A program made the translations under genes and the position numbers. Below the pieces are notes generated by a model. The model was given only the letters and a program-made list of their open reading frames with translations, did not search any database and had not been told where the DNA came from. From the NCBI GenBank assembly GCA_002269645.1, contig NIVC01000639.1, positions 166,972 through 230,971 of the forward strand: DNA of 64,000 bases. The letters run 5' to 3'. Of the stretch, positions 1 through 20,552 are shown piece after piece. Numbering within the stretch: position 1 is the first letter of the stretch; each line of letters starts with the position of its first letter. This stretch comes from Macrostomum lignano (lineage: Eukaryota).

Positions 1-2428
1 GATCTCTCATGCAATCAAGCATGATCTCTCATGCAATCACACCTGATCTCTCATGCAATCACACCTGATCTCTCATGCAATCAAGCATGATCTCTCATGC
101 AATCAAGCATGATCTCTCATGCAATCACACCTGATCTCTCATGCAATCAAGCATGATCTCTCATGCAATCACACCTGATCTCTCACGCAATCACACCTGA
201 TCTCTCATGCAATCACACCTGATCTCTCATGCAATCACACCTGATCTCTCATGCAATCACACCTGATCTCTCATGCAATCAAGCATGATCTCTCATACAA
301 TCAAGCATGATCTCTCATACAATCAAGCATGATCTCTCATGCAATCACACCTGATCTCTCATACAATCAAGCATGATCTCTCATGCAATCACACCTGATC
401 TCTCATGCAATCAAGCATGATCTCTCATGCAATCACACCTGATCTCTCATGCAATCACACCTGATCTCTCATGCAATCACACCTGATCTCTCATGCAATC
501 ACACCTGATCTCTCATGCAATCACACCTGATCTCTCATGCAATCAAGCATGATCTCTCATGCAATCAAGCATGATCTCTCATGCAATCAAGCATGATCTC
601 TCATACAATCAAGCATGATCTCTCATGCAATCACACCTGATCTCTCATGCAATCACACCTGATCTCTCATGCAATCACACCTGATCTCTCATGCAATCAA
701 GCATGATCTCTCATGCAATCACACCTGATCTCTCATGCAATCACACCTGATCTCTCATGCAATCAAGCATGATCTCTCATGCAATCAAGCATGATCTCTC
801 ATGCAATCAAGCATGATCTCTCATGCAATCACACCTGATCTCTCATGCAATCACACCTGATCTCTCATGCAATCACACCTGATCTCTCATGCAATCAAGC
901 ATGATCTCTCATGCAATCAAGCATGATCTCTCATGCAATCACACCTGATCTCTCATGCAATCACACCTGATCTCTCATGCAATCAAGCATGATCTCTCAT
1001 GCAATCAAGCATGATCTCTCATGCAATCACACCTGATCTCTCATGCAATCAAGCATGATCTCTCATGCAATCAAGCATGATCTCTCATGCAATCACACCT
1101 GATCTCTCATGCAATCAAGCATGATCTCTCATGCAATCACACCTGATCTCTCATGCAATCACACCTGATCTCTCATGCAATCACACCTGATCTCTCATGC
1201 AATCAAGCATGATCTCTCATGCAATCAAGCATGATCTCTCATGCAATCACACCTGATCTCTCATGCAATCAAGCATGATCTCTCATGCAATCACACCTGA
1301 TCTCTCATGCAATCAAGCATGATCTCTCATGCAATCACACCTGATCTCTCATGCAATCACACCTGATCTCTCATGCAATCAAGCATGATCTCTCATGCAA
1401 TCAAGCATGATCTCTCATGCAATCACACCTGATCTCTCATGCAATCAAGCATGATCTCTCATGCAATCAAGCATGATCTCTCATGCAATCACACCTGATC
1501 TCTCATGCAATCACACCTGATCTCTCATGCAATCAAGCATGATCTCTCATGCAATCAAGCATGATCTCTCATGCAATCACACCTGATCTCTCATGCAATC
1601 AAGCATGATCTCTCATGCAATCAAGCATGATCTCTCATGCAATCACACCTGATCTCTCATGCAATCAAGCATGATCTCTCATGCAATCACACCTGATCTC
1701 TCATGCAATCACACCTGATCTCTCATGCAATCACACCTGATCTCTCATGCAATCAAGCATGATCTCTCATGCAATCAAGCATGATCTCTCATGCAATCAC
1801 ACCTGATCTCTCATGCAATCACACCTGATCTCTCATACAATCAAGCATGATCTCTCATGCAATCACACCTGATCTCTCATGCAATCAAGCATGATCTCTC
1901 ATGCAATCACACCTGATCTCTCATGCAATCACACCTGATCTCTCATGCAATCACACCTGATCTCTCATGCAATCACACCTGATCTCTCATGCAATCAAGC
2001 ATGATCTCTCATGCAATCACACCTGATCTCTCATGCAATCAAGCATGATCTCTCATGCAATCACACCTGATCTCTCATGCAATCACACCTGATCTCTCAT
2101 GCAATCACACCTGATCTCTCATGCAATCACACCTGATCTCTCATGCAATCAAGCATGATCTCTCATGCAATCAAGCATGATCTCTCATGCAATCACACCT
2201 GATCTCTCATGCAATCACACCTGATCTCTCATGCAATCACACCTGATCTCTCATGCAATCAAGCATGATCTCTCATGCAATCAAGCATGATCTCTCATGC
2301 AATCACACCTGATCTCTCATGCAATCAAGCATGATCTCTCATGCAATCACACCTGATCTCTCATGCAATCACACCTGATCTCTCATGCAATCAAGCATGA
2401 TCTCTCATGCAATCAAGCATGATCTCTC
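1..2428. repeat. 22-bp tandem minisatellite with two interspersed unit variants (truncated by window start)
   Basis: Units GATCTCTCATGCAATC+AAGCAT or GATCTCTCATGCAATC+ACACCT, about 110 copies, ending at ...GATCTCTCCCTTTG. Confidence 0.98.
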
Positions 2429-2946: not shown

Positions 2947-5900
2947 TCAGGCGTCAGGCTCAAGGTAGGCACCGTCGTCATGCTCCACCAGTGCGCGCTG
3001 CTGATCCAGGAAGCGGCAATACGCCGCAACATTAGTCGGCCGGCGGACCGAGATCACGAGGTTCGGGTGCACGGGGTTCGCTATGTACGCATTGACCCTG
3101 CGCCTGGCGTAGTCAACGGGGATGGCAGCACCGAAGGTGGTCATCTCCACTTCTTTGTCACTGAAAACTCCGCGACTGGCGGCTGCGATGTACTTGGACG
3201 GGCAGGCGAGGCAGTCATTCATGGTGCCGACCATGTCGCGGAAGCTCGGCCGAGACTCCGGATGCGGCAGCCAGCAGCTCAGCAGGATGTTGTAGAAGTC
3301 GATGCTGCAGATGTCGGGCTGGTTCAGTCGGATGCCCTTCTTCAGCAGGCCGGTGATGTCCTCCACCGAGCGGATCCCGTACGGGTTGTAGGGCGACTCG
3401 CCGAACGTGCAGATCTCCCACAGCAGCACGCCGTAGCTCCACACGTCCGACTTGTGGCTGAACAGTCCGGACTCAAAGCACTCCACGCCGAGCCACTTCA
3501 CCGGCAGCAGGCCGGCCGTCTGGATGAACTCGCCCTCCGACATGTCCAGCAGACGGGCCAGCCCGAAGTCCGTGATCCTCACCTGGTCCGGAGTCTGCAG
3601 CAGCACGTTGCGGGCAGCCAGGTCGCGGTGTACAATGCCCAGAGACTCCAGGTACTCCATGCCCTCTGCCACTTGTAGACCCCAGCGCAGCATTCGCTCC
3701 GCACCGATCTGGTTGCGGTGCGCTCGCAGGAACTCCAGCAGACAGCCCCGAGGCATCAGCGCCGTGATCAGCTGCGGCTCCTGGGTCAGGCACAGAGCCA
3801 CCAGTCGGATACAGCATGGATGCTGCACTCTGGCCAGCATGCTCGCTTCGTTCAGCAGCTCTTGGCCCAGCTTCGGACTGTGGCCGCGCAGCACCTTGAT
3901 CGCGACGGGCAGCTCGCGAACTCCCTTGTTCGTGCTCGACCGCAGGATGCCCTTGTACACCGTGCCGAACGCGCCACTGCCAACCTCCTTCTGCTTCATC
4001 ACATCGTCGTCATTCACAATCAGCAGCTTCGCCATGGCGTTCGGGTTGCTCGGGTCCGTCAGGTACTCGTCCAAGTCGACGATTTCGTACTTTCGCATGC
4101 GCCTCCGGTAGTGCACGTAGGCCACCGGCAGCAGCACCAGCAGCACCAGAATGAGCAGCCCGACGCCAATGCCGACGGTGAGGAGTCTCGCAGACGCCAC
4201 CGAGTAGCAGCGGCCCTTCGAGTCGGCGCGCATCTCTCGGCTGCTACAGGCGGCCACGCACTTGCCGTCCTCCTCCAGGTTGCTGCAGCGCTCGCACTCG
4301 GAGGCGCTCGGACTGCTGCAGCCACCCTCGCACTCGCTGTGGCACTCCTGACATTCTCCGCTCAGATTGTACCGACCGGCCTCCTGGCACGTGGCGTAGC
4401 AGCGGCCGTCCACCTCGAAGTTCCGGCAGGCTACGCACATGTCGGGTCCGGGTCCCCAGCACTCGTCGCGGCACTGGGGGTCACAGACGGCGTTCCTGCA
4501 CACCTCGCTCGTGTTGTCGAAGCTGCGCTCCTTATCTGTTTCGCTTGGCCAGTGCTCCTTCAAGTCTTGCAGCTTCGCCGCGAAGTTGAACGGAAACCAG
4601 CGAGCGCAGAGACCTCTGACATTTCTCAGGCCGAAACAGGACACGTATTTCAGAGACGCAAAGCCAAAATGAGTAATTCTGCAGTCATCAACAAATAGGT
4701 GCCCTGAAACTTGCACGAGATTTTTAAGAAAGCTAAGGCTTCCTATGTGCTGTGGAATATTTTTTATTACAAATTTTTCGACCAAAATAGCTCGAACGGA
4801 TTTCAGATTCCAAATTCCAGAATCTGCATCCAGCGGTCCCAATCGCAGTTGATTTCCATCGATGCTTAAAACTTTTTTAAACTTCAACTCTGTCGGTGCC
4901 AGTGTCGAACAGTTGCTAAACTTTCCTAGAAATTCCTCAGTAAGGGTTCTCTGAAAGCCGTCTTTGCACACGTGGCAGCCCTGTCGCACTCCGGCCACTG
5001 AGCAGGGAGTGCAGATTCCGCTGATGGGCATTTGACCATCAGGACATTCGACAATGCAGTACTTGTGATTGGAATCAATCACGAAGTCTCTCGGGCACTG
5101 GTCAACGCAAACGTTTCCTGCCTGCATCAGAGAATCCTGCGCCGTGTTGATTCGGCTGTATGCCGCATCATACGAATTATTGCGGCAGCTATGGGCGCAC
5201 CTGCCGGCCAGAAGCACACTGCGGCACGCGCGACACTCGCTTGGTTGAAATGACCGGCACCCTCCGAGACAGCTGTTGTCGCAGCATTCTTCCTCGCCGG
5301 TGGGCCGAGTATAGCAGGAGTGGCAGCTTCGCTTCCTGCACTTGGACACCATCTGGCACTCCGTGCTTGACCAGCACAATCGGTGGCCTTCCTTGCTCAT
5401 GGGACAGTCGTCAGGGCACTCGGGGAGATGAGAACAGATGTTAGCCTGATCAGCCGGTTTGAGCGAACTGTTGGTCATGTTATTCAAGTGAGTCACTGCA
5501 TCGAGCAGATGCTGTTCTTTGTGCTCGAATACTTCACTCCAGCTAATTTTTCGGGTTAGCTGGCAATAGAGGTGGATGTCCATGCTGGTGGAGAACATTA
5601 CACCGGGTCCTTGGATGGAGACGAGCTTTGGCATGAATATCTGAGTCGGCGTGTTGCAGTATCCGATCTCCAAGGCGTATAAAGGGTGAGAGGGGCTTTG
5701 CGAGTAGATGAAGCCTCTGATGGCTCTGAGGTTCCGCAGCTCGAGTCGCTTGATGCCGAGGCCCGTGATAACAACTCTACCGGATACCTCTCTAATGGAA
5801 TCAAGAAAGCTAGTATTCATTTCATAGATGTTGCGGTCGATTGTGACTCCGGTGAAGTGCGACCCCAGAAAATGGACGTGCAAATCTCCGTTTACGAATT

Positions 5901-6087
5901 GACAGCCGTCCACCTTGCGGGAGAGAATTTCATGCAGATAGCTCACATTCTTTAGCTGTTTGTAGTCGCTGTTCGTGATGCGGAGGCTCCGGCAGATTTT
6001 CGGCTCCGGAACTATGGCCGAGTGGCCGGGCTTCGGCACCCGGAACGCCATCAGCCACAGTAGGACAAGGACCGCGTCGCTTCGCAT
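2947..6087 (-). CDS. EGFR: EGFR/ErbB-family receptor tyrosine kinase, copy A (single exon)
   Basis: Uninterrupted ORF; the likely start is ATG 6087 (MRSDAVLVLLWLMAF, signal-peptide-like) rather than the track's TTG 6132. It has an L1 domain (DGCQFVNGDL...LRNLRAIRG), furin-like Cys-rich domains, L2, a TM helix (LLTVGIGVGLLILVLLVLLPVAYV), and a kinase with GSGAFG, VAIK, HRDLAARN, DFG and SDVWSYGV. Confidence 0.95.
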   Translation of the reverse strand: MRSDAVLVLLWLMAFRVPKPGHSAIVPEPKICRSLRITNSDYKQLKNVSYLHEILSRKVDGCQFVNGDLHVHFLGSHFTGVTIDRNIYEMNTSFLDSIREVSGRVVITGLGIKRLELRNLRAIRGFIYSQSPSHPLYALEIGYCNTPTQIFMPKLVSIQGPGVMFSTSMDIHLYCQLTRKISWSEVFEHKEQHLLDAVTHLNNMTNSSLKPADQANICSHLPECPDDCPMSKEGHRLCWSSTECQMVSKCRKRSCHSCYTRPTGEEECCDNSCLGGCRSFQPSECRACRSVLLAGRCAHSCRNNSYDAAYSRINTAQDSLMQAGNVCVDQCPRDFVIDSNHKYCIVECPDGQMPISGICTPCSVAGVRQGCHVCKDGFQRTLTEEFLGKFSNCSTLAPTELKFKKVLSIDGNQLRLGPLDADSGIWNLKSVRAILVEKFVIKNIPQHIGSLSFLKNLVQVSGHLFVDDCRITHFGFASLKYVSCFGLRNVRGLCARWFPFNFAAKLQDLKEHWPSETDKERSFDNTSEVCRNAVCDPQCRDECWGPGPDMCVACRNFEVDGRCYATCQEAGRYNLSGECQECHSECEGGCSSPSASECERCSNLEEDGKCVAACSSREMRADSKGRCYSVASARLLTVGIGVGLLILVLLVLLPVAYVHYRRRMRKYEIVDLDEYLTDPSNPNAMAKLLIVNDDDVMKQKEVGSGAFGTVYKGILRSSTNKGVRELPVAIKVLRGHSPKLGQELLNEASMLARVQHPCCIRLVALCLTQEPQLITALMPRGCLLEFLRAHRNQIGAERMLRWGLQVAEGMEYLESLGIVHRDLAARNVLLQTPDQVRITDFGLARLLDMSEGEFIQTAGLLPVKWLGVECFESGLFSHKSDVWSYGVLLWEICTFGESPYNPYGIRSVEDITGLLKKGIRLNQPDICSIDFYNILLSCWLPHPESRPSFRDMVGTMNDCLACPSKYIAAASRGVFSDKEVEMTTFGAAIPVDYARRRVNAYIANPVHPNLVISVRRPTNVAAYCRFLDQQRALVEHDDGAYLEPDA

Positions 6088-7289
6088 CTCTTGCGAGTGG
6101 TGCTTAGGGTCTTTTATCTGAAATTGAAGCAATTTTTAGGGCTTCAAAATCTAAATCTCATGTTAAAAACTGGCCAATGCAAATTGCGGAGACCCTCTTG
6201 CTACACAAGACGTGAAGTTCCCCCTTTTTAATTTGCTTTGAGGGTCGAACCGTTTGAGTTTGGCTAGCAGCTACTTATTAACTAGCCACGAAGACTTGTC
6301 AGCTTACCGCAAATTGCTTTGAGGCGCAGTATGAGAAGCGAAATTTCGTGCAACCTGTGCAGCGGGGGCAGCAGCAGCAGCCAAGAGATGCAATCCAGCT
6401 TTTATGCCCTGAGTCCATTAAGCTCACCCACGCCCCGGCCTCTCCAACCCAGGCACAAGTGCAAGAGAAGCAGCCAATCTGACGGTAGTTGCCAGCTGTC
6501 TACACGGTTGCACCCGCGAATTTTCCAAAAGAAAGGCACAGTTGGGTGTCCGTCCGTATTGTCAGGAAACAAGTGACAATGATTTACAAGCCGCCATGCT
6601 GAATATAATCCGTTGTTTACTGCTCTTTGTGTCTGTCGAATCCGCCTGATTCAGTGTGCATTGTTTAATGGCAATTAATTTTTGCGGCAACAAGTCTTTG
6701 ATCTCGCCGAAGTGGGAGCGGCGATCCGAATGAGGATCTGAGGAGAATTCAAGAGTCACGTGAAACCCGTTTACTAGAGGGAACAGCTATTGGGTGCCTT
6801 CTAGAAACAAGTGATCTGAGCAGCTCTGAGCAGCCCAGATCAGGCTTTGTCACCGATTCAGCAGAGAACGTTTTGAGCCGATGAAGTGGAGACAAAAGGG
6901 TATAACTAAGTGGCCGTTTAGCAGACTAATCCAGCGCATTTATTTGATGCAGCGCACTCGGCATTCGGTGCATTGTCTGACTACTTCGATTAGTTGCGAA
7001 GTGGCACTCTTGATGGCTCAATGAACGTTCGAAGAGAAGATTTTAGCGGGAGCAGGTCAACGCCCCCTCACAGCATGCAGCACCAGGACGGTGCAGCCCA
7101 CGTTTTAAAGGTCTGTAGAGAGATCCAAACCAAGAGAACTGAACTCACCTGCAAGACTTGTGATTAACGATATGCCTTTTCAATTTTTGCAGTAGAAATT
7201 TAGAAGCGGCCCACGCTACCGCGGATAAAAACAAGTAACTCACTGCAAGGCTCCAGACACTCCGTCACTGGCCACTAATTTTGAAAAAT

Positions 7290-7545
7290 ATTGTCTTTTG
7301 CGTGACTGCACAAAAACAGGGATTACTTGGTGTAGCCCGACTGTAAGCCCAGTAGGAAATGAACCATCTGCAAATCTACGCAGACAACCCATTCATGATC
7401 ATGGTAGGCTACGAACGTACATACGAGCGTACTTGAACGCATCAAATTGTTCCTTTAGTGTTGTCGAATGGGCTGGAGGTATTGATGGATAAACATTGCC
7501 GTTGTGTAGCAGTACACATTTCTAAGAGCACTTGCTGGGGTCAAT
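7290..7545 (-). mobile_element. Degenerate Chapaev(CMC)-type transposase fragment
   Basis: Manual minus-strand translation gives IDPSKCS*KCVLLHNGNVYPSIPPAHSTTLKEQF, then after a frameshift HEWVVCVDLQMVHFLLGLQSGYTK*SLFLC. These match Chapaev motifs as I recall them (SLKCVLLHNGN; CVDLKMVNFLLGQQSGYTKYPCFLC). Contains stops and a frameshift. Confidence 0.7.
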
Positions 7546-7599
7546 GCGTCGACCCAAAGTAGCCTAGGGACAGGGAGACGCAGATACAGCTCTGCTGCA

Positions 7600-7900
7600 G
7601 CATCGGTCCTATCAGCGCTCCAAAACTTCCACAGACTTGTTGGTACGCCGATGTGTAGTAGAGGGTCCTCCCTCACAGCGAAGTCCCGCGGATCCGCCTT
7701 AATAGACACCCCTGCAGCGCGATGACATCACAGCTTAGGTTGAGCGCTAGCTTTGCCAGAGCCCCTCTCCGCCCAGGCGGCCCCGAGAGTGCGGCAGTTC
7801 AGCGTCCCGACCCGAAGTATGAGCAGTTGAGTCTCACGGAAGATCCGCATGGGCCAGCGCAGCCGCAGTTCGGCGGACAGCACCACGTCGCCGACCGCGC
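7600..7900 (-). mobile_element. Degenerate non-LTR retrotransposon (RTE-like) APE endonuclease N-terminal fragment
   Basis: Minus-strand LRVGTLNCRTL followed, in another frame, by AKLALNLSCDVIALQ; these are the GTxN and DIIxLQE motifs of LINE endonucleases. Frameshifted. Confidence 0.6.
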
Positions 7901-8709
7901 CAATTTCACTTCACGTCGGAGCTCAACACGCCGACGTTCGCTCCGCTGCTCTTGCTTAGTCCTGCCGCTGTTGGCCGCCGCAGCAGTGAAGCGCAGTCGA
8001 CCGTCTTGACCACTTGGAGGTCGCAGAATTTACTTTATCAACGTGCAAATAATACAGGACTCCCCTCTCCATAAGTTTGACTCAAGCCCCGATGCCAGGC
8101 ATCATTTGTCACTTAGTGAGCCATTTTGCACTGCGTCTGCAGATGCTCAGTGTAAGCTACAAAACCTTCCTTTGCTTGACTTCAACTGGCCAAAACGAGT
8201 CCAACACACTAGCAATGCAAAGTGCACTGAAGGCCAAGCTTTTGTTAGAGAGGAAGAAACAAACAATATCGCGTTACACTGACGCAGCTTTCCCAACTTT
8301 GCTGTAATTTTAGCTCGCTAATGATTTAAGATGCACAAGAAACCTCAGCAAACTTCATGCTTGCAGCTTTGAATATTAGGCTCGCTACTTACAACAGTAT
8401 ACGCGGGTCTGTGTGCTAGATAATTATCACGCCTATGCCAATGTGTTAGTCGATAAGTCAAATATGGATAAACAAAAATTTAGATAGATTTCGATCTGTT
8501 TGTGAAGCTGCTGATGATGACATTTAGACACAAAAAATTGCAAAACCCATTCGACTGAGAGATGCATGCTGCAGTTCGAGATATCTGGGCTTTTAGCCCG
8601 GCTGCTTTTCACACCGCAACAACCACTCCAGTGGACTACTGGGAGTAACGGGGTTACAACGGTAACCACCAACTATCTGTTGCCTATTAGTCTTTCAAGT
8701 CACTGATTA

Positions 8710-9020
8710 AACCACCAACCACCAACCAGTCCCGGGATCCCACACCAACCAGCCCCGGGATTCCCCACCAACCAGTCCCAAGATCCTGAACCAACCAGTC
8801 CCGAGAGCCGAGATCCCGCACCAACCAGTCCCAAGATCCTGAACGAACCAGTCCCGAGAGCCGAGATCCCGCACCAACCAGTCCCAAGATCCTGAACCAA
8901 CCAGTCCCGAGATCCCCCACCCACCAGGTCCCGGGATCCCACAACAACCAGTCTCGAGATCCTGCACCAACCAGTCCCGGGATCCCCCACCCACCAGTCC
9001 CGAGATCTCGCACCAACCAG
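8710..9020. repeat. Degenerate ~23-bp minisatellite
   Basis: Repeated ACCAACCAGTCCCGAGATCC-like units. Confidence 0.85.
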
Positions 9021-9399
9021 TGAGGGGACACTATGCATCCAACGCCGCAACAGTTGCAGCACATCGTGTGGCAAGTCAGCGTTAGAGTTTCAAGTGAAAA
9101 CTCGTATTTCAATCCAATGCAGTCCGGAGGGCAGAGTTAATGAATTCACGGGCATGAGCCGGCGCAAAACATAATGCAGGATCATTTCATTCTTCACGAT
9201 AAATTTAACCAAGCCTAACAGCTGCGCAAATTGTGACTGACATTTGCAATATCTGAGGCCATGTGGATGAGCACTGGACACTCAAACAGAAATGAAATTG
9301 CAATAAACCTGTGAGCAGTCAGGCTGCAAGCTTGAGTTCGAAACATGCATAATACGGTTGGGTTTTAAAATGTTTAAAACTGTTTTTACGGTTAGGCCA

Positions 9400-9782
9400 T
9401 CGGGGTCACGGAAGGCCATGGGGTCATGGGGGTCAGGGGAGTCATGAAGGTCAGTGGGGTCATGGGGGTCATAGGGGTCATGGAGGTCAGGGGGATTAGG
9501 GGGTCAGGGCTCTAGGGGGTCAGTGCGTTAGGGGGTCCGGGCGTTAGGGGTCAGGGGGTCATGGGTGTCATAGTTGTCATGGGGATCAGGGGTCTGGGGT
9601 CATGGGGGTCATGGAGGTCAGGGGGATCAGGGGGTCAGGATTTCAGGGTGTCAGGGTGTCAGGGTCAGGGGTCATGGGGGTCATGGGCGTCATAGGGGTC
9701 ATGGAGGTCACGGGGTCAGGGTGTCAGGGGTTAGGGGGTCATGGGGTCAGGGGGTCATGGGGTCAGGGGTCAGGGGGTCATG
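9400..9782. repeat. Degenerate G-rich GGGGTCA(T/G) short-unit array
   Basis: Dozens of GGGGTCA units. Confidence 0.85.
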
Positions 9783-10359
9783 ACACCTCAAACGGCCGAC
9801 CATTAAAATTTGTCTACTGCACCTGATTGGCGGCTCGGACACGCTAAGCGGTTGAGCCGTTTTTTTCTAAAATTAAAAAAATAGCTCTGGGGTGATTAAA
9901 TTTTGCAAAATTTCCTCCTGCGAAATGTCGCGATTAGGCCGCCGTGTTTGCTTTCGAAGTTGCCGCGCGCTTCCCTCTTGGCCCCAGATTTCCGCGCAAA
10001 TATTTTCCCCATCTTTAATTTACTCACTCTGCAGAGTTCCCTTCACAAAAAGTTTGCAGAAATCCAAGCCAGCTCTGTGCAGTTTGAGTTGCCGTACTCA
10101 ATCTGGCACTTTTATTGCTGCGGCACGAGAGGCAATAAAAGCCAGTGAAAAACGCTGGGCTGCGCAAGCAGGCAGCGGCTGCACTAATCGCGTCCTGCAC
10201 TCAGCGAGTTCGTCTGTTCGTCTGGATGAAATAACAGATTTTGCCGTGAAGCCGCTGATAAATGCAGGCTGCGCGAAATCCGACTGCGCTGCTGGATGAA
10301 CTGCCTCTTCCAGTCCTCTGCGCTTCGTGTCCGCCCTCTGCCGCTTCTTAGCGGACTCT

Positions 10360-10665
10360 ACTTTTCCCTCTACCACTCCACTTTTCCCTCTAGCACTCTA
10401 CGTTTTTCTCTACCCGCTCTACTTTTCCTTCTAGCGCTCTACGTTTTTCTCTACCCGCTCTACTTTTCCCTTTACCGCTCTACTTTTCCCTCTACCGCTC
10501 TACTCCTACCTCTAACGCTCTACTTTTCTTTCTAGCACTCTACTCTTTTCTCTACCCGCTCTACTTTTCTCTCCACCGCTCTGCTTTTCTTTCTAGCACT
10601 CTACTTTTCTCTCTACCGCTCTACTCTTCTCTCAATAGCGCTACTCTTCCCTCTACCGCTGGACT
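10360..10665. repeat. Pyrimidine-rich degenerate array (CTCTACTTTTCCCTCTACCG-like)
   Basis: Repeated CTCTAC...TTTTC units. Confidence 0.85.
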
Positions 10666-10700
10666 TTCCTATCAACCAAATGATTATTTGATCCAACGAT

Positions 10701-11553
<853 letters not shown>

Positions 11554-11841
11554 TAGATTTGTCTTTTCACTCAGCGCCAGCGCCACTTCCTGATGCTAAT
11601 GAGAGCAGAAGGCTCTGGCACTCTGATGCCGCTGTCATTAGAAATGCATCATCCAAGCACGCGGTGACTACGCGAAAATTTTAATCAACTGCTAATTGGT
11701 GTGACGCAGGACAACTGATGCATTGCCTGTTGCATTAAGCATACTTAGCTCGGATATGCGCTGTTCTATCTGAGAGGGCGTCGCTTTTACAAACTAGAAA
11801 TGCCCGTTATTTTCACAAGCTCAAATTTATGACAGCTAGTA

Positions 11842-13585
11842 GAGTGAGTGTCAGACTGTCAGGATCGCTAGAGTGGGTGTCAGACTGTCAGGATCGCTAG
11901 AGTGGGTGTCAGACTGTCAGGATCGTTAGAGTGGGTGTCAGACTGTCAGGATCGCTAGAGTGGGTGTCAGACTGTCAGGATCGCTGGAGTGGGTGTCAGA
12001 CTGTCAGGATCGCTAGAGTGAGTGTCAGACTGTCAGGATCGCTGGAGTGGGTGTCAGACTGTCAAGATCGCTAGAGTGGGTGTCAGACTGTCAAGATCGC
12101 TAGAGTGGGTGTCAGACTGTCAGGATCGCTAGAGTGGGTGTCAGACTGTCAGGATCGCTAGAGTGGGTGTCAGACTGTCAAGATCGCTAGAGTGGGTGTC
12201 AGACTGTCAAGATCGCTAGAGTGGGTGTCAGACTGTCAAGATCGCTAGAGTGGGTGTCAGACTGTCAAGGATCGCTAGAGTGGGTGTCAGACTGTCAGGA
12301 TCGCTAGAGTGGGTGTCAGACTGTCAAGATCGCTAGAGTGGGTGTCAGACTGTCAAGATCGCTAGAGTGGGTGTCAGACTGTCAAGATCGCTAGAGTGGG
12401 TGTCAGACTGTCAAGGATCGCTAGAGTGGGTGTCAGACTGTCAAGATCGCTAGAGTGGGTGTCAGACTGTCAAGATCGCTAGAGTGGGTGTCAGACTGTC
12501 AAGATCGCTAGAGTGGGTGTCAGACTGTCAGGCCTGCTAGAGTGGGTGTCAGACTGTCAGGATCGCTAGAGTGGGTGTCAGACTGTCAGGATCGCTAGAG
12601 TGGGTGTCAGACTGTCAGGATCGCTAGAGTGGGTGTCAGACTGTCAGGATCGCTAGAGTGGGTGTCAGACTGTCAGGCCTGCTAGAGTGGGTGTCAGACT
12701 GTCAGGATCGCTAGAGTGGGTGTCAGACTGTCAGGATCGCTAGAGTGGGTGTCAGACTGTCAGGATCGCTAGAGTGGGTGTCAGACTGTCAGGCCTGCTA
12801 GAGTGGGTGTCAGACTGTCAGGCCTGCTAGAGTGGGTGTCAGACTGTCAGGATCGCTAGAGTGGGTGTCAGACTGTCAGGCTTGCTAGAGTGGGTGTCAG
12901 ACTGTCAGGCTTGCTAGAGTGGGTGTCAGACTGTCAGGATCGCTAGAGTGGGTGTCAGACTGTCAGGATTGCTAGAGTGGGTGTCAGACTGTCAGGGGAC
13001 CAATAGAGTGGTTGTCAGACTGTCAGGATCGCTAGAGTGGGTGTCAGACTGTCAATGATCGCTAGAGTGGGTGTCAGACTGTCAGGATCGCTAGAGTGGG
13101 TGTCAGACTGTCAGGATCGCTAGAGTGGGTGTCAGACTGTCAAGGATCGCTAGAGTGGGTGTCAGACTGTCAAGGATCGCTAGAGTGGGTGTCAGACTGT
13201 CAAGGATCGCTAGAGTGGGTGTCAGACTGTCAGGATCGCTAGATGAGTGTCAGACTGTCAGGATCGCTATAGTGGGTGTCAGACTGTCAGGGGACCAATA
13301 GAGTGGGTGTCAGACTGTCAGGATCGCTAGAGTGGGTGTCAGACTGTCAGGATCGCTAGAGTGAGTTTCAGACTGTCAGGATCGCTAGAGTGAGTGTCAG
13401 ACTGTCAGGATCGCTAGAGTGGGTGTCAGACTGTCAAGGATCGCTAGAGTGGGTGTCAGACTGTCAAGGATCGCTAGAGTGGGTGTCAGACTGTCAAGGA
13501 TCGCTAGAGTGGGTGTCAGACTGTCAGGATCGCTAGAGTGGGTGTCAGATTGTCAGACTTGCTACATGGGGTGTCAGACTGTCAG
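11842..13585. repeat. 29-bp minisatellite, array 1
   Basis: Unit AGAGTGGGTGTCAGACTGTCAGGATCGCT with variants. Confidence 0.97.
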
Positions 13586-14054
13586 GACCGCTCTTGGTGT
13601 AGAAAGCACACGGTATACTTTTGCCTGTTTCTGGTCTCCAATAGCAGATTAATTTCAGTTCGTTTTGAAGCGACATTGGGGATGAATTCCAGCAAATCCC
13701 GTATAAAACTTCCGGATAAAGCAGCACGAAAAAAGTTTAAGTGCAAGATATTATAGCCATCCTGTTGCTAGGGGGTCTACGAGAAGTTCTGAACCCGGAC
13801 GAACTGCACTTGGGATTTGCCAGCCTGCGCCCCCTCCCCCCAGTCTAAGAAGACGACGTCTTTCTGATTGTACAGCTTACCAACAAACTATTCGCTGCTT
13901 TATCAAGGATGCAGAAAAACTGAAAAATGTCAGCAGTTCGGTACATCCTACCTTGTCTCGTGGAATTAAAGCTTTTAGTTGTAGAGGTCTGTCTAAGTGA
14001 GTGACTGCATGTTCTCGATCTTCGCTTGCTACACTGGTTAGCATTAGAGCTGAC

Positions 14055-15850
14055 GGGTTTCAGACTGTCAGGATCGCTAGAGTGGTTGTCAGACTGTCAG
14101 GCTTGCTTGGGGGTCAGACTGTCAGGATCGCTAGAGTGGTTGTCAGACTGTCAGGCTTGCTTGGGGGTCAGACTGTCAGGATCGCTAGAGTGGTTGTCAG
14201 ACTGTCAGGCTTGCTTGGGGGTCAGACTGTCAGGATCGCTAGAGTGGTTGTCAGACTGTCAGGCTTGCTTGGGTGTCAGACTGTCAGGATCGCTAGAGTG
14301 GTTGTCAGACTGTCAGGCTTGCTTGGGTGTCAGACTGTCAGGATCGCTAAAGTGGGTGTCAGACTGTCAGGCTTGCTTGGGTGTCAGACTGTCAGGATCG
14401 CTAGAGTGGGTGTCAGACTGTCAGGCTTGCTAGAGTGGGTGTCAGACTGTCAGGATCGATATAGTGGGTGTCAGACTGTCAGGATCGCTAGAGTGGGTTT
14501 CAGACTGTCAGGATTGCTAGAGTGGGTGTCAGACTGTCAGGATCGATAGAGTGGGTGTCAGACTGTCAGGATCGATAGAGTGGGTGTCAGACTCTCAGGA
14601 TCGCTAGAGTGGTTGTCAGACTGTCAGGCTTGCTTGGGTGTCAGACTGTCAGGATCGCTAGAGTGGGTTTCAGACTGTCAGGATTGCTAGAGTGGGTGTC
14701 AGACTGTCAGGCTTGCTAGAGTGGGTGTCAGACTGTCAGGATCGATAGAGTGGGTGTCAGACTGTCAGGATCGCTAGAGTGGGTGTCAGACTGTCAGGAT
14801 CGCTAGAGTGGGTGTCAGACTGTCAGGATCGCTAGAGTGGGTGTCAGACTGTCAAGGATCGCTAGAGTGGGTGTCAGACTGTCAAGGATCGCTAGAGTGG
14901 GTGTCAGACTGTCAGGATCGCTAGATGAGTGTCAGACTGTCAGGATCGCTAGAGTGGGTGTCAGACTGTCAAGGATCGCTAGAGTGGGTGTCAGACTGTC
15001 AGGATCGCTAGAGTGAGTGTCAGACTGTCAGGATCGCTAGAGTGAGTGTCAGACTGTCAGGATCGCTAGATGAGTGTCAGACTGTCAGGATCGCTATAGT
15101 GGGTGTCAGACTGTCAGGATCGCTAGAGTGGGTGTCAGACTGTCAGGATCGCTAGATGAGTGTCAGACTGTCAGGATCGCTAGAGTGGGTGTCAGACTGT
15201 CAAGGATCGCTAGAGTGGGTGTCAGACTGTCAAGGATCGCTAGAGTGGGTGTCAGACTGTCAGGATCGCTAGATGAGTGTCAGACTGTCAGGATCACTAG
15301 AGTGGGTGTCAGACTGTCAAGGATCGCTATAGTGGGTGTCAGACTGTCAGGATCGCTAGAGTGAGTGTCAGACTGTCAGGATCGCTAGAGTGAGTGTCAG
15401 ACTGTCAGGATCGCTAGATGAGTGTCAGACTGTCAGGATCGCTATAGTGGGTGTCAGACTGTCAGGATCGCTAGAGTGGGTGTCAGACTGTCAGGATCGC
15501 TAGATGAGTGTCAGACTGTCAGGATCGCTAGAGTGGGTGTCAGACTGTCAGGATCGCTAGAGTGAGTGTCAGACTGTCAGGATCGCTAGATGAGTGTCAG
15601 ACTGTCAGGATAGCTAGAGTGGGTGTCAGACTGTCAGGATCGCTAGAGTGGGTGTTAGACTGTCAGGATCGCTAGAGTGGGTGTCAGACTGTCAGGATCG
15701 CTAGAGTGGGTGTCAGACTGTCAGGATCGCTAGAGTGAGTGTCAGACTGTCAGGATCGCTAGATGAGTGTCAGACTGTCAGGATCGCTAGAGTGGGTGTC
15801 AGACTGTCAGGATCGCTTGCTTGGGTGTCAGACTGTCAGGATCGCTAGAG
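14055..15850. repeat. 29-bp minisatellite, array 2 (same family; local alternating higher-order variant near 14070-14350)
   Basis: Same unit as 11842-13585, separated from it by about 470 bp of non-repetitive DNA. Confidence 0.97.
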
Positions 15851-15964
15851 TTTCCAAAATTCTCGAGTGACGGTCAGAACAGTGCCACGACAACGCTTTT
15901 CCAGGAAGCGCTATGAACACAATTTACCAGCACAAGGAAAGCTCGGGAGCGCAACAACCCTGAA

Positions 15965-16578
15965 TAGGGAATACAATCCCGGGATTTTGGTTAGGCCTAA
16001 ATCCCGGGATCACAATTGTCCGGTATTCGAAAATCCCGGGATTGACCATCGGGATCCTGATCCTGCTTTGCAATGATCTCGAGTATCTGCAGCTGAGATA
16101 CTTGTCAGGTGAAAATCATAACTCAGTTGTCCTACCTTGATTTCTTAATCGTTTTAAGCATGCAGGGTAGCGAGTAGAAGGCTATAGGGCTGCAGGGACA
16201 CGAAACAGAAGCTGTTAGCAGGTCGTAAGGGTATTTAAGGTGTACTAATGTAGAACTACTTTAAGCAGTCCCTACCTTCAAAACTCCTTGGCCGTAGTTG
16301 GGATTAGAACAGTGGGGACCTTGCTATCGGACCACAACCCAAGCTACCAGTTCTCCATCTAGGGCGGGTGCCCCTGGGAGGGTGAGGTCTGATCCCCTTC
16401 TGCCCTGGTATCAGTGCCTCGGGCCATAGCTCTGTAAGCTATCATTCTTCAGGTTACATCACAATCAAGTGTGATTTTCCTGAGCTGATACTGGCATGTA
16501 AAAAAGCACCTTTACAGCACCTTTACAGAAATCCCGACAATCCCGAGATTGGCAAAACTCGGGATTTTGTATTCCCTA
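15965..16578. mobile_element. Non-autonomous hAT-type MITE (614 bp)
   Basis: TIRs TAGGGAATACAATCCCG / CGGGATTTTGTATTCCCTA; subterminal (AT)CCCGGGAT repeats; exact 8-bp TSD ACCCTGAA at 15957-15964 and 16579-16586. Confidence 0.88.
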
Positions 16579-17279
16579 ACCCTGAACATTTAAGTGGTTT
16601 GCCATGATGCCATGCCATTGCCATCGGTTTGTCACAACCCACCAATATTTTCAGTCAGTTTCATTTTATTAATTGGACCAGTGCCCAATCCGAGTCAAAT
16701 GTACAGTGCGCACGGAATGCACACTCCTTGTACACTCACTCACTCTGTGCGCTTGAGGCCTCAGCTTAGGAGTGGGGCTGGGGGGTGCTTGCGATAAGTC
16801 AGCTCGCAGTCAATTGGGTGACGGGGCACAGCGGGGGGGGTCTGCATTTGAAAGGCTGTGCAGTCGCCCGGCCCCATTTTACTGATAAGCGAATGGAGGC
16901 CTGATATGGCATAAAGCGTTGTAGCGATCTCGCAGTGCTTTATATAGCCTGGCTGGCAAACTGCGTGGGCCGCACGAGGAGAAAAACGCAACAAACAGGT
17001 AAACCGACCAAGCTGCCAAGAGAAGCCTTCGATTTGGCAGCTCACCTGCAATCAACTACGCTTTAGTATTGTTTGTTTGTTAAAAACCTTCGCAAAAGAC
17101 TGCCTTATTGGGGCATTTCCCGCAACTGCGCGAGCCTGATAAGATAAAGGCCGATTCAATTCACTTTCAAAAAAGACAGGCTCAGCGAGCGGAAAGGCGA
17201 GGCAAAACGAGTAATTAACAGCTGAAAAATACTGCAGAATTTCCTGGCAGCCTGCGCGAAACAGTTGACGCTGGGAAAC

Positions 17280-20200
17280 ATGACTCTAAGGCTCCGGCTG
17301 CTCACTCTGCAGCTGCTGCTGCTGGCCGCATCAGCTTCAGCCAGCCAGCCGCTGGGCTCCAGCAGCCGCCTGTGCAAGACGGTCTACATCTCAAGTCGCG
17401 AGTACCGCACCCACAGGAACATCAGCCGGCTGCATGCTGAGCTCCAGGCCAGCGTGGACGGCTGCCAGTACGTTCACGGCGACGTAATCATCCAGAACAT
17501 CGGCGCCGACTCCGTCACTGAGGAGCCGATTGACGAGGCCATCCGCGGCCTCCAAACCGACTTCCTGGACTCCATCATCGAGATCAGCGGCCGATTGGTG
17601 ATCAAACGGATTAACCTGGAGCGCATCAGCTTGCGCAACTTGCGCGCCATCCGCGGCTACAACCTGGAGAACACCAGCCCCTTCTTCGCAATGGAGGTTT
17701 TCCAATCGAAGTACCCGGTCAAGCTAGAGCTGCCGCAGCTGAGCGCCATCCTGCAAGGCGACGTCCGCATCATCGGCAACCTGCACGCCGACCTTTACTG
17801 CTACCTGTCCCGCCGGATTAATTGGCCCAGCCTCTTCCAGAGCCACTCGAGCCGAACGCCGCAGCAGTTCAACGACAACGTGGAGATCATGACGCTGGGC
17901 GACCAGCAGATCAACGTCAGCGACTACGCCGCAACCGAGAAGGTCTGCACGTCGCTTCCAGCGTGCAACTCCAGCTGCCACACGGAGAAGTCCGGGCGGC
18001 AGCTCTGCTGGTCCGACAGTCCCGGGGGCTGCCAGAGCTTCCACGGGTGTCTCGTGCGCCCATGTCGGAACTGCTTCCGCCATCCGTACACAGGCAACGA
18101 GGAGTGCTGCGAAAGCGACTGTCTTGGCGGTTGCTCGAACAAATCGGACGGCTGCTTTTCCTGCCGCGATGTCAGCCTGGACGGCGTCTGCAAAGGCAAC
18201 TGCCCGATGAAGACCGATCTGAACCCCGGCACCAACAAGATCGAGACGCGGAACTCCAGTACAACTATGAAGCGAGTGGGCAACATCTGCGTGAAACAGT
18301 GCGAGATGCCCTTCGTCACCAGCTCCAACGACAAGTACTGCGTGAGCGAGTGCCCTCTGACCGAGATTCCCGTCAATGGCATCTGCACGCGCTGCGCGGC
18401 CAAGCACCAGTCTGCCTGCGAGACGTGCACCGTCGACACGCTAATCATGAGCGACAAAGTGGCGCAGGCTTTGAAGAACGGCAACTGCACGATTTGGCGG
18501 ACCGACTCGTCGCTGGATATCAACTCGGAGAAGCTCAACAGCAGTGCCAGCCTCGAGACGCTGGAGTTTCTGCGAATTTTCTATGGCCGACTGTTCATCA
18601 AGCGGACGGATCGGCTGGTGGACAATCTGCGGTTCCTTCGCAATCTTAAATTTGTTTCGAACAACTTTGGCATCATGATGCTGCACACGCGGTACCTGGG
18701 CCTCGCCAGCCTGCGATACGCCAAAGCTCTCTGGCTCATCAAGATCAGCGGGCTCTGCGAAGCTTGGTACCCTAGCAGAAGAATTCGACAGATTACAGAG
18801 GTCACGAAAGAATTTACCATAGGCACCCGTGAAATCAGCTTCGACAACACGAGCGAGGTGTGCAGGAACGCCGTCTGTGACCCCCAGTGCCGCGACGAGT
18901 GCTGGGGACCCGGATCCGACATGTGCGTAGCCTGCCGGAACTTCGAGGTGGACGGCCGCTGCTACGCCACGTGCCAGGATTCCGGTCGGTACAATCTGAG
19001 CGGAGAATGTCAGGAGTGCCACAGCGAGTGCGAGGGCGGCTGCAGCAGTCCGAGCGCCTCCGAGTGCGAGCGCTGCAGCAACCTGGAGGAGGACGGCAAG
19101 TGCGTGGCCGCCTGCAGCAGCCGAGAGATGCGCGCCGACTCGAAGGGCCGCTGCTACTCGGTGGCGTCTGCGAGACTCCTCACCGTCGGCATTGGCGTCG
19201 GGCTGCTCATTCTGGTGCTGCTGGTGCTGCTGCCGGTGGCCTACGTGCACTACCGGAGGCGCATGCGAAAGTACGAAATCGTCGACTTGGACGAGTACCT
19301 GACGGACCCGAGCAACCCGAACGCCATGGCGAAGCTGCTGATTGTGAATGACGACGATGTGATGAAGCAGAAGGAGATTGGCAGTGGCGCGTTCGGCACG
19401 GTGTACAAGGGCATCCTGCGGTCGAGCACGAACAAGGGAGTTCGCGAGCTGCCCGTCGCGATCAAGGTGCTGCGCGGCCACAGTCCGAAGCTGGGCCAAG
19501 AGCTGCTGAACGAAGCGAGCATGCTGGCCAGAGTGCAGCATCCATGCTGTATCCGACTGGTGGCTCTGTGCCTGACCCAGGAGCCGCAGCTGATCACGGC
19601 GCTGATGCCTCGGGGCTGTCTGCTGGAGTTCCTGCGAGCGCACCGCAACCAGATCGGTGCGGAGCGAATGCTGCGCTGGGGTCTACAAGTGGCAGAGGGC
19701 ATGGAGTACCTGGAGTCTCTGGGCATTGTACACCGCGACCTGGCTGCCCGCAACGTGCTGCTGCAGACTCCGGACCAGGTGAGGATCACGGACTTCGGGC
19801 TGGCCCGTCTGCTGGACATGTCGGAGGGCGAGTTCATCCAGACGGCCGGCCTGCTGCCGGTGAAGTGGCTCGGCGTGGAGTGCTTTGAGTCCGGACTGTT
19901 CAGCCACAAGTCGGACGTGTGGAGCTACGGCGTGCTGTTGTGGGAGATCTGCACGTTCGGTGAGTCGCCCTACAACCCGTACGGGATCCGCTCGGTGGAG
20001 GACATCACCGGCCTGCTGAAGAAGGGCATCCGACTGAACCAGCCCGACATCTGCAGCATCGACTTCTACAACATCCTGCTGAGCTGCTGGCTGCCGCATC
20101 CGGAGTCTCGGCCGAGCTTCCGCGACATGGTCGGCACCATGAATGACTGCCTCGCCTGCCCGTCCAAGTACATCGCACAGCGGTACAGCACCATGGACCC

Positions 20201-20552
20201 GAACCTGTTCGACACCGATGATGCTGTCGGGTTTGTGACCGAAGTGTCAAAGCCGGCCGCACCGCAGCCGTTGCAGAAAAGCCCGGACAAGCACGGCGTG
20301 GAGCTGAACTCGTACATCTCCGACCCGACCTCCTGCTCGGCATCGAAACTGCGTAACTCGCCGGCACGGGCGCTGCAAGCTCAGGCCAGCAACACCAGCG
20401 AGAGCGCCGGCCTGCTGAGCGGCCAGATGAGCGTGCCCGACGCAAACGACGACTACCTGACGCCGACGTCGCCGGGAGATAACTACGGAGACGTGCACGA
20501 CGGTGGCGGAGCATGCGGCCTGGACGACTACCTGACGCCGAGGAAGGCGTGA
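17280..20552 (+). CDS. EGFR: EGFR/ErbB-family receptor tyrosine kinase, copy B (single exon)
   Basis: Uninterrupted ORF; likely start ATG 17280 (MTLRLRLLTLQLLLLAASASA, signal peptide). L1-CR1-L2-CR2-TM-kinase with the same catalytic motifs as copy A, and a Tyr-containing tail (YSTM, DDYLTP twice). Confidence 0.95.
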   Translation: MTLRLRLLTLQLLLLAASASASQPLGSSSRLCKTVYISSREYRTHRNISRLHAELQASVDGCQYVHGDVIIQNIGADSVTEEPIDEAIRGLQTDFLDSIIEISGRLVIKRINLERISLRNLRAIRGYNLENTSPFFAMEVFQSKYPVKLELPQLSAILQGDVRIIGNLHADLYCYLSRRINWPSLFQSHSSRTPQQFNDNVEIMTLGDQQINVSDYAATEKVCTSLPACNSSCHTEKSGRQLCWSDSPGGCQSFHGCLVRPCRNCFRHPYTGNEECCESDCLGGCSNKSDGCFSCRDVSLDGVCKGNCPMKTDLNPGTNKIETRNSSTTMKRVGNICVKQCEMPFVTSSNDKYCVSECPLTEIPVNGICTRCAAKHQSACETCTVDTLIMSDKVAQALKNGNCTIWRTDSSLDINSEKLNSSASLETLEFLRIFYGRLFIKRTDRLVDNLRFLRNLKFVSNNFGIMMLHTRYLGLASLRYAKALWLIKISGLCEAWYPSRRIRQITEVTKEFTIGTREISFDNTSEVCRNAVCDPQCRDECWGPGSDMCVACRNFEVDGRCYATCQDSGRYNLSGECQECHSECEGGCSSPSASECERCSNLEEDGKCVAACSSREMRADSKGRCYSVASARLLTVGIGVGLLILVLLVLLPVAYVHYRRRMRKYEIVDLDEYLTDPSNPNAMAKLLIVNDDDVMKQKEIGSGAFGTVYKGILRSSTNKGVRELPVAIKVLRGHSPKLGQELLNEASMLARVQHPCCIRLVALCLTQEPQLITALMPRGCLLEFLRAHRNQIGAERMLRWGLQVAEGMEYLESLGIVHRDLAARNVLLQTPDQVRITDFGLARLLDMSEGEFIQTAGLLPVKWLGVECFESGLFSHKSDVWSYGVLLWEICTFGESPYNPYGIRSVEDITGLLKKGIRLNQPDICSIDFYNILLSCWLPHPESRPSFRDMVGTMNDCLACPSKYIAQRYSTMDPNLFDTDDAVGFVTEVSKPAAPQPLQKSPDKHGVELNSYISDPTSCSASKLRNSPARALQAQASNTSESAGLLSGQMSVPDANDDYLTPTSPGDNYGDVHDGGGACGLDDYLTPRKA

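What the first reader, a model, noticed from the sequence alone, without database searches (positions are those of the whole stretch)
4526..18835. Potential invertible receptor switch: a crossover in the inverted block swaps tails between ectodomains in frame
Seen: the genes are head-to-head and intronless, and the shared block is in the same reading frame in both. The 14.3 kb between the arms holds both promoters and both ectodomains; the two different tails lie outside. Established: homologous recombination between inverted repeats inverts the intervening DNA. Inference: one crossover would give ectodomain A-tail B and ectodomain B-tail A with no loss of sequence, i.e. a 2x2 ligand-to-output rewiring as a polymorphism or somatic event. 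No evidence here that it actually occurs.
Basis: inference. Interest (0 to 1): 0.78.

Follow-up and report, generated by a model that had tools for sequence, protein, structure and literature searches.

The report
Shared kinase block, flatworm EGFR pair
Two neighbouring, oppositely oriented EGF-receptor genes of the flatworm Macrostomum lignano carry an almost identical 1.3-kb kinase-encoding block, most likely copied between them by gene conversion; a crossover there could swap their tails, but every available copy of the locus has the same orientation, so nothing shows a working switch.

Summary
Arms 3184-4525 and 18836-20177 form a 1342-nt inverted repeat with 8 mismatches and sharp edges, in frame inside two head-to-head, intronless EGFR/ErbB-type receptor genes of Macrostomum lignano (assembly Mlig_3_7).

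The repeat covers domain IV, the transmembrane helix and the kinase. In it the proteins are 99.1% identical. The ectodomains are 33% identical and the tails about 21-27%. Other M. lignano EGFR paralogs are only 62-69% identical in the same block. The best explanation is therefore non-allelic gene conversion between two old paralogs.

I found no sign that it happens:
- All three subgenome copies of the locus keep the reference orientation at the junction(s) I could read.
- The older ML2 gene models do too, and none of the 8 gene models/ORFs is chimeric.
- No ORF of at least 100 aa between the arms has a real Pfam match, so no recombinase was found there.
- The two tails carry the same kinds of tyrosine motifs.

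All the data come from one inbred line and consensus assemblies, so rare or somatic inversion is not excluded.

Verdict: an ordinary substrate for recombination between repeats, with an unusual in-frame layout. Modest interest.

The parts
2947..6132 (-). Gene A: intronless EGFR/ErbB-type receptor tyrosine kinase. The ORF as listed starts at a TTG; the first ATG is at 6087, the stop at 2947-2949, giving 1046 aa.
   Evidence: ORF list. Pfam Recep_L, Furin-like, GF_recep_IV and PK_Tyr_Ser-Thr. 99% identical to ML2 proteins P0063, P0068 and P0069. Its exact product is absent from the NCBI annotation.
2950..3183 (-). Tail A (78 aa), outside the inverted repeat. Tyrosine motifs: NAYIANP, GAYLEP, VDYARR, AAYCRF.
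   Evidence: About 21-27% identity to tail B.
3184..4525 (-). Left arm: the shared block in gene A. It encodes the start of domain IV, the transmembrane helix, the juxtamembrane region and the whole kinase (aa 522-968).
   Evidence: Catalytic motifs GSGAFG, VAIK, HRDLAARN and DFG are present.
4526..6087 (-). Ectodomain A: signal peptide, L1, furin-like Cys-rich region and the L2 region (521 aa). Lies inside the interval.
   Evidence: 33% aa identity to ectodomain B; GC3 61%.
6088..17279 (.). Divergent intergenic region, 11.1 kb. Both promoters are inferred to lie here. No convincing gene. Contains a 29-nt satellite at 11840-15851 (139 copies) and smaller arrays.
   Evidence: TRF. ORFs of at least 100 aa have no real Pfam match. 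Collinear with L001 and L002.
17280..18835 (+). Ectodomain B (519 aa). Lies inside the interval.
   Evidence: 45% aa identity to the ectodomain of the intron-bearing paralog P0002 and only 33% to A. GC3 82%.
18836..20177 (+). Right arm: the shared block in gene B (aa 520-966).
   Evidence: Same tract boundaries in the copies L001 and L002.
20178..20552 (+). Tail B (124 aa plus stop), outside the inverted repeat. Tyrosine motifs: NSYISDP, two DDYLTP, DNYGDV, and QRYSTM at the start of the tail.

Best explanation
Genes A and B are two old, divergently transcribed, intronless EGFR/ErbB-family receptor genes of Macrostomum lignano. A 1342-bp segment encoding domain IV, the transmembrane helix and the kinase has been made nearly identical between them by non-allelic (interlocus) gene conversion. 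There was at least one founding event before the three subgenomes separated, and probably small exchanges since.

The ligand-binding ectodomains and the docking tails were not converted and stayed divergent. The inverted repeat is a by-product of that exchange, not a dedicated switch. Its orientation is stable in the sequenced line. A crossover between the arms could occasionally invert the 14.3 kb and swap the tails in frame, as with any long inverted repeat, but that would be a rare structural variant.

Shown: the tract, its edges, the paralog incongruence and the constant orientation. Inferred: conversion as the mechanism, its direction (B into A), and the rarity of inversion.
For: - The block is 99.4% identical in nucleotides and 99.1% in protein (443/447). 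Only 4 synonymous and 4 non-synonymous differences separate the arms, so selection on the protein alone cannot explain it.
- Outside the block the genes are 33% (ectodomain) and about 21-27% (tail) identical.
- In the same block, other M. lignano EGFR paralog pairs are 62-69% identical. Ectodomain B is closer to P0002 (45%) than to A (33%), so the block and its flanks tell different histories.
- Arm A of the window differs from the B arms of the other two subgenome copies by 7 and 12 positions. The B arms differ among themselves by 9-15. Arm A therefore sits within the spread of the B arms.
- Sites 202 and 212 show all four combinations. At site 212 (Ser/Gly) the window's gene B carries the state found in all four gene A sequences.
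- Block GC3 is 87%. That matches gene B (82-83%) rather than gene A (61-73%).
- Tract boundaries are the same in all three copies.
- Orientation is the same in the window, L001, L002 and the ML2 models, and there is no chimera.
- No ORF of at least 100 aa between the arms has a real Pfam match, so no recombinase was found.
- Precedent: the homogenised 4-kb inverted paralogs in yeast (PMC9731477).
Against: - I could not read the gene A arm of the other two subgenome copies at the nucleotide level. 'Ongoing' versus 'single founding' conversion therefore rests on a handful of sites.
- Polishing among six near-identical arms could scramble single SNPs.
- A founding conversion between sequences that were then only about 65-70% alike is hard for ordinary homologous recombination. 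The first event may have been a template switch or a segment replacement.
- Conversion between inverted repeats is mechanistically linked to crossover, so inversion is not ruled out.
- All the data come from one inbred line (DV1). ML2 and Mlig_3_7 share the same PacBio reads (PMC5730564).
Confidence: 0.8

Rival explanations
1. Flip-flop polymorphism. Recurrent homologous recombination between the arms inverts the 14.3 kb on evolutionary or population timescales. Some M. lignano haplotypes would then encode ectoA-tailB and ectoB-tailA receptors.
For: The geometry is correct. A perfect 560-nt run and 99.4% identity over 1.3 kb are adequate substrate. There are signs of exchange between the arms. 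The yeast 24-kb flip/flop region shows that homogenised inverted paralogs do flip repeatedly over evolutionary time (PMC9731477).
Against: Three subgenome copies, whose local flanks differ by about 0.8-2.1% (the genome-wide figure is 1.9-2.4%, PMC10733133), all keep ectoB-tailB and the same downstream flank. ML2 has three ectoA-tailA models and one model with both junctions in reference order. The site-212 exchange is non-reciprocal, as expected of conversion and not of double inversion. The yeast region, with arms three times longer, did not flip in about 53,800 mitoses and 950 meioses.
Confidence: 0.12
2. Programmed or somatic switch. Cells invert the segment in a regulated way to rewire ligand input to tail output, giving four receptors from two genes.
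For: Only the in-frame geometry. Consensus assemblies cannot see minority orientations.
Against: No ORF of at least 100 aa in the interval has a real Pfam match, so no recombinase was found there. I did not scan the rest of the window for one; the only enzyme-like ORF I examined nearby belongs to a transposon that is absent from the other two copies. There are no short specific crossover sites: the arms are plain coding homology. The tails share the same motif types, NxY[IV]x[DN]P and [DG]xYLxP, which all four paralogs carry, so the functional gain is doubtful. The other EGFR paralog loci have no such partner within 10 kb.
Confidence: 0.02
3. A single recent segment replacement with no exchange since. 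One event shortly before the subgenome split copied the block from gene B into gene A, and the 8 differences are later mutations.
For: The tract boundaries are identical in all copies. The tree of the four arms is star-like. GC3 points to a B origin. The Ser/Gly site 212 separates A-type from B-type in most copies.
Against: The window's gene B carries the A-type state at site 212. Sites 202 and 212 show all four combinations. Sites 212 and 715 group the window's two arms against the other copies. Each of these could also be a parallel mutation or a polishing error.
Confidence: 0.3
4. Assembly artefact. The inverted repeat, or its near-identity, was produced by mis-assembly or consensus polishing.
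For: Mlig_3_7 is redundant and partly chimeric (PMC10733133). L002 has a 1-nt deletion in a C5 run that truncates the gene model P0061. That looks like a long-read homopolymer error.
Against: The same structure, with intact ORFs across both junctions, appears in three contigs and in the separately assembled ML2 models. The arms are only 1.3 kb, well within long-read length.
Confidence: 0.03

Closest known systems
Yeast chromosome XIV 'flip/flop' region: 24 kb between homogenised 4-kb inverted paralog pairs (Salzberg et al. 2022, PMC9731477)
   Same: Paralogous genes in inverted orientation are kept nearly identical by gene conversion and flank a segment of some tens of kb. Inversion would occur by ordinary homologous recombination, without a dedicated recombinase.
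   Different: In yeast both orientations are documented in many strains and species; here only one is seen. The yeast repeats contain whole genes, so inversion makes no chimeric protein. Here the repeat lies inside two coding sequences, so inversion would swap C-terminal tails. The arms here are three times shorter.
Inversions in human disease and polymorphism mediated by inverted low-copy repeats: F8 intron 22, IDS/IDSP1, FLNA-EMD, and sequence exchange between PMS2 and PMS2CL (from my own knowledge)
   Same: Inverted paralogous segments of about 1-10 kb and over 97% identity undergo conversion and occasional inversion.
   Different: Those events disrupt a gene or are neutral. None is known to make two functional in-frame hybrids. 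No inversion is documented here.
Bacterial and phage invertible segments that swap protein C-termini or domains in frame: phage Mu G segment/Gin, the R64 shufflon, phase-variable hsdS loci (from my own knowledge)
   Same: Inverted repeats lie inside coding sequence, and inversion joins a constant part to an alternative variable part in frame.
   Different: Those systems use short specific sites and a dedicated adjacent recombinase, and both orientations coexist in cultures. None of these features is found here.
EGFR/ErbB receptor family, expanded in flatworms: 8 EGFRs reported in M. lignano (Barberan et al. 2016, PMC4914847)
   Same: Domain order is L1, furin-like Cys-rich region, L2 region, domain IV, transmembrane helix, tyrosine kinase and a Tyr-rich tail. 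The catalytic motifs are intact.
   Different: Both genes are intronless, whereas the paralogs P0002 and P0003 have 4 and 8 introns and the planarian EGFRs have introns (PMC4914847). Pfam does not detect the second L domain. The kinase module is shared almost identically between two otherwise distant paralogs.

Membership tests
EGFR/ErbB receptor tyrosine kinase | Receptor L domain followed by a furin-like cysteine-rich region | tested here: met
   PF01030 (A 2.2e-9, B 5e-18) and PF00757 (A 2e-19, B 3.5e-16).
EGFR/ErbB receptor tyrosine kinase | Second L domain (domain III) between the two cysteine-rich regions | tested here: inconclusive
   Pfam reports only one Recep_L stretch per protein. 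A stretch of about 130 aa of the right length and position is present and aligns with the paralogs.
EGFR/ErbB receptor tyrosine kinase | Growth-factor-receptor domain IV, a single transmembrane helix and a cytoplasmic tyrosine kinase with catalytic motifs | tested here: met
   PF14843 and PF07714 (E about 1e-78). GSGAFG, VAIK, HRDLAARN and DFG. The hydrophobic stretch LLTVGIGVGLLILVLLVLLPVAYV followed by RRRMRK is read directly from the sequence.
EGFR/ErbB receptor tyrosine kinase | C-terminal tail with tyrosine docking motifs | tested here: met
   Tail A has 4 Tyr and tail B has 5. The motifs NxY[IV]x[DN]P and [DG]xYLxP are shared with P0002 and P0003. Phosphorylation was not tested.
Interlocus gene-conversion tract (concerted evolution of paralogs) | A discrete tract of near-identity, including synonymous sites, flanked by diverged paralogous sequence | tested here: met
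   1342 nt with 8 differences, 4 of them synonymous. The flanks are 33% and about 21-27% identical in protein.
Interlocus gene-conversion tract (concerted evolution of paralogs) | Phylogenetic incongruence between the tract and its flanks | tested here: met
   Block: A-B 99% against 62-69% for other paralog pairs. Ectodomain: B-P0002 45% is higher than A-B 33%.
Interlocus gene-conversion tract (concerted evolution of paralogs) | Paralogous copies within a genome are closer to each other than orthologous or homeologous copies are (repeated conversion) | tested here: inconclusive
   Arm A lies within the spread of the three B arms (7-12 against 9-15 differences), and a few sites are mosaic. The A arms of the other subgenomes could not be read at the nucleotide level.
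Inversion-prone inverted repeat (flip-flop by recombination between repeats) | Inverted repeats of about 1 kb or more at very high identity, with long perfect runs | tested here: met
   1342 nt, 99.4% identical, longest perfect run 560 nt.
Inversion-prone inverted repeat (flip-flop by recombination between repeats) | Both orientations observed among haplotypes, strains or species | tested here: not met
   The window, L001, L002 and the ML2 models are all in the reference orientation. The sample is one inbred line only.
Programmed site-specific invertible switch (Gin/Hin/shufflon type) | A dedicated recombinase encoded at or next to the invertible segment | tested here: not met
   The five ORFs of at least 100 aa in the interval have no real Pfam match. 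I did not scan the rest of the window. The nearby 680-aa ORF is the transposase of an element absent from the other copies.
Programmed site-specific invertible switch (Gin/Hin/shufflon type) | Coexisting orientations within one population or individual | not testable with these tools
   This needs raw single-molecule reads. Only consensus assemblies were reachable.

The most novel reading that the evidence does not exclude
In natural M. lignano populations, or at low frequency in somatic or germ cells, recombination between the two arms flips the 14.3-kb segment. Two intronless EGFR genes would then yield four receptors (ectoA or ectoB joined to tailA or tailB). This would be a eukaryotic, recombinase-free counterpart of bacterial in-frame shufflons.
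Probability: 0.1. Interest if true: 0.7.

Novelty: new member of a known kind. Interest (0 to 1): 0.33.

Why it matters
The locus is a clean example of modular receptor evolution. The ligand-binding part and the docking tail of two old EGFR paralogs diverge freely, while the membrane-proximal and catalytic module is kept identical by DNA exchange.

It also has practical consequences for work on M. lignano, a regeneration model:
- The 1.3-kb block exists in about six near-identical copies (two genes in three subgenomes).
- Short-read transcript assemblies, PCR products, and RNAi or in situ probes aimed at the kinase region will not separate the two receptors. They can also produce artefactual chimeras.
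- The exact gene A product is missing from the NCBI annotation of Mlig_3_7.

If inversion were ever shown, it would be a rare case of in-frame domain swapping by inversion in an animal nuclear genome. Nothing here shows it.

Tried and rejected
- **Third homolog search.** I searched with ectodomain A alone to list every A-type protein and look for chimeras. It returned nothing, not even P0063, which is 99% identical. The word index is patchy, so this negative is uninformative.
- **Encoding-contig look-ups.** The exact gene A product and P0063 are not on record. I therefore could not read the left junction or arm A in the other two subgenome contigs. The 10-kb flank of L001 stops about 160 bp short of the gene A ORF (about 205 bp from its ATG).
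- **Purifying selection as the cause of the identity.** Rejected, because synonymous sites are identical too and other paralogs are 62-69% identical in the block.
- **Assembly artefact.** Rejected, because three contigs and the ML2 models agree.
- **A recombinase between the arms.** The ORFs there lie in satellite or simple repeats, and their Pfam 'hits' have no passing stretch.
- **A family-wide head-to-head layout.** The P0002 and P0003 loci show a single EGFR gene within 10 kb on either side.
- **An old intron position at the block's 5' edge.** Intron 1 of P0002 maps about 15 aa upstream of the edge. That is near but not coincident, so nothing can be concluded.
- **The 680-aa transposon ORF.** A single-sequence Pfam scan and a PDB sequence search found nothing. 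Only a 48-member profile reached RAG1L/RAG1.


Full report
**Source.** The window comes from the flatworm Macrostomum lignano, assembly Mlig_3_7 (GCA_002269645.1), contig NIVC01000639.1. Gene B's product is an exact NCBI protein of that contig.

**1.
- The repeat finder gives one long inverted pair in the first 30 kb: 3184-4525 and 18836-20177, 1342 nt, 99% complementary, 14310 nt apart.
- The pairwise alignment shows 8 mismatches. Identity collapses to scattered matches within a few bases of each end. The longest perfect run is 560 nt.
- Gene A (2947..6132, minus strand; first ATG at 6087; 1046 aa) and gene B (17265..20552, plus strand; first ATG at 17280; 1090 aa) are single uninterrupted ORFs.
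- Both have the EGFR/ErbB domain order: receptor L domain, furin-like Cys-rich region, growth-factor-receptor domain IV and a tyrosine kinase. The catalytic motifs are intact.
- The genes lie head to head. The arms are in the same reading frame in both and encode aa 522-968 of A and 520-966 of B: the start of domain IV, the transmembrane helix, the juxtamembrane region and the whole kinase.
- The ectodomains and an 11.1-kb intergenic region lie between the arms. The tails lie outside.
- The intergenic region holds a 4-kb satellite with a 29-nt unit and smaller arrays, but no convincing gene.

**2. What the repeat is.**

The two genes are old paralogs:

| Region | A vs B | Other paralog pairs (A, B, P0002, P0003) |
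|---|---|---|
| Ectodomain | 33% aa identity | 34-45% (B-P0002 is highest at 45%) |
| Block | 99.1% (443/447 aa) | 62-69% |
| Tail | about 21-27% | 13-30% |

(the two tail figures come from a pairwise and a four-way alignment.)

- The arms differ by only four synonymous and four non-synonymous substitutions. Selection on the protein cannot explain that.
- Ectodomain B is closer to the intron-bearing paralog P0002 (45%) than to ectodomain A (33%). The block and its flanks therefore have different histories.
- This is the signature of non-allelic gene conversion, or of a segment replacement followed by conversion.
- Third-position GC is 87% in the block, 82-83% in the rest of gene B and 61-73% in the rest of gene A. 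Either B was the donor or conversion has been GC-biased.

**3. Comparison with the other copies of the locus.**
- Mlig_3_7 contains three homeologous subgenomes with about 1.9-2.4% SNP divergence (PMC10733133).
- I retrieved the gene B locus from the other two: L001 (NIVC01001626.1) and L002 (NIVC01000386.1).
- L001 is collinear with the window from about 6293 and L002 from at least about 11840. Both then run through gene B and on into the downstream flank.
- The tract boundaries are the same in both.
- Between copies, nucleotide divergence is 0.26-0.45% in ectodomain B, 0.67-1.04% in the arm, 1.3-2.1% in tail B and 0.8-2.1% in the flanks.
- Arm A of the window differs from the B arms of L001 and L002 at 7 and 12 positions. 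The three B arms differ from each other at 9-15. The paralogous arm thus lies inside the spread of the homeologous arms.
- Sites 202 and 212 show all four combinations.
- At site 212 (Ser/Gly) the window's gene B has the state seen in the window's gene A and in all three ML2 gene A models. The other B copies have Gly.
- These points suggest small non-reciprocal exchanges after the subgenomes split. They rest on few sites, and polishing among six near-identical arms could have produced them.

**4. Does the segment invert?**

An inversion changes both junctions at once, so reading one junction is enough.
- Gene B is joined to tail B and to the same downstream flank in all three subgenome copies.
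- The ML2 model P0062 reads through the antisense of tail A, the arm and ectodomain A, and then through ectodomain B, the arm and tail B.
- The three ML2 gene A models all end in tail A.
- None of the 8 gene models/ORFs is chimeric.
- No ORF of at least 100 aa in the interval has a real Pfam match, so no recombinase was found.
- The other EGFR paralog loci have no head-to-head partner within 10 kb.
- Both tails carry the same motif types, NxY[IV]x[DN]P and [DG]xYLxP, which P0002 and P0003 also carry. Tail B has one more YLxP. From memory, YLxP resembles the DEYLIP site around Tyr992 of human EGFR. A swap would therefore change motif number more than kind.

Limits of this test:
- ML2 and Mlig_3_7 were built from the same PacBio reads of one inbred line (PMC5730564).
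- Consensus assemblies hide minority orientations.
- Rare, population-level or somatic inversion is therefore untested.

**5. Comparison with what is known.**
- The nearest documented system is the yeast chromosome XIV flip/flop region. There, homogenised 4-kb inverted paralogs flank 24 kb that has flipped many times over evolution. It did not flip in about 53,800 mitoses and 950 meioses (PMC9731477).
- The present locus meets the substrate criteria of that class but not the criterion of two observed orientations.
- It differs in that the repeat is intragenic, so an inversion would produce two in-frame hybrid receptors.
The defining recombinase, specific sites and coexisting orientations are absent or untestable here.
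- M. lignano is reported to have 8 EGFRs from a lineage-specific expansion (PMC4914847).
- A and B are unusual in being intronless. P0002 has 4 introns and P0003 has 8, and the genome-wide mean is about 5 per gene. That hints at a retrocopy ancestor, but I could not resolve this.

**6. Verdict.** The evidence supports a gene-conversion tract between old paralogs and gives no sign of a working switch. I rate it a new member of a known kind, of modest interest. The most novel reading still open is a flip-flop in populations or soma; I put it at about 0.1.

Noticed in passing
window 21579-25035: A 3457-bp DNA transposon is present here but absent from the same site in both other subgenome copies. 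It has a 5-bp target-site duplication (GCTGC), 236-nt terminal inverted repeats ending in CACGGTT, and one intact 680-aa ORF (22163..24205, plus strand). The ORF has no Pfam hit. It belongs to a family of more than 3400 representative proteins. A 48-member profile of that family hits only amphioxus RAG1L and vertebrate RAG1 in the PDB (E 2.7e-4 to 0.03, same region). It looks like a recently inserted Transib-type (RAG1-like) element.
   Followed up: yes
window 2947-6132 (gene A): The exact gene A product is absent from the protein collection and from the NCBI gene calls of Mlig_3_7. Near-identical models exist only from the older ML2 annotation (P0063, P0068, P0069). This is probably an annotation gap caused by the shared block, or gene A may have little transcript support.
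   Followed up: partly
window 2980-4698 (+) and 18441-19909 (-): Long ORFs (219-400 aa) lie antisense to the GC3-rich block. They look like composition artefacts. One archived 3053-aa model (P0062, UPI0007A2709C) strings such antisense frames of gene A together with gene B.
   Followed up: partly
L002 about 11602 (arm position 46; corresponds to window 18881): The L002 copy of gene B has a 1-nt deletion in a C5 run at the start of the block. It truncates the annotated protein to 549 aa (P0061). It could be a long-read homopolymer error or a real pseudogenising frameshift in that subgenome.
   Followed up: partly
window 1-2428, 11840-15851, 27965-30223: Large tandem arrays: a 22-nt unit in 110 copies running to the left edge of the window, a 29-nt unit in 139 copies between the two genes, and units of 35, 32 and 21 nt downstream. 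Copy numbers differ between the subgenome copies.
   Followed up: no
window about 32801-37671: In L001 the match jumps from window 32801 to 37671. This AT-rich stretch (GC 30-45%) is therefore another insertion/deletion difference between the subgenome copies. I did not examine its content.
   Followed up: no
window 2947-6132 and 17265-20552, compared with L003 and L004: Genes A and B are intronless, whereas the M. lignano paralogs P0002 and P0003 have 4 and 8 introns. This suggests a retrocopy origin for the A/B ancestor. Intron 1 of P0002 maps about 15 aa upstream of the block's 5' edge.
   Followed up: partly
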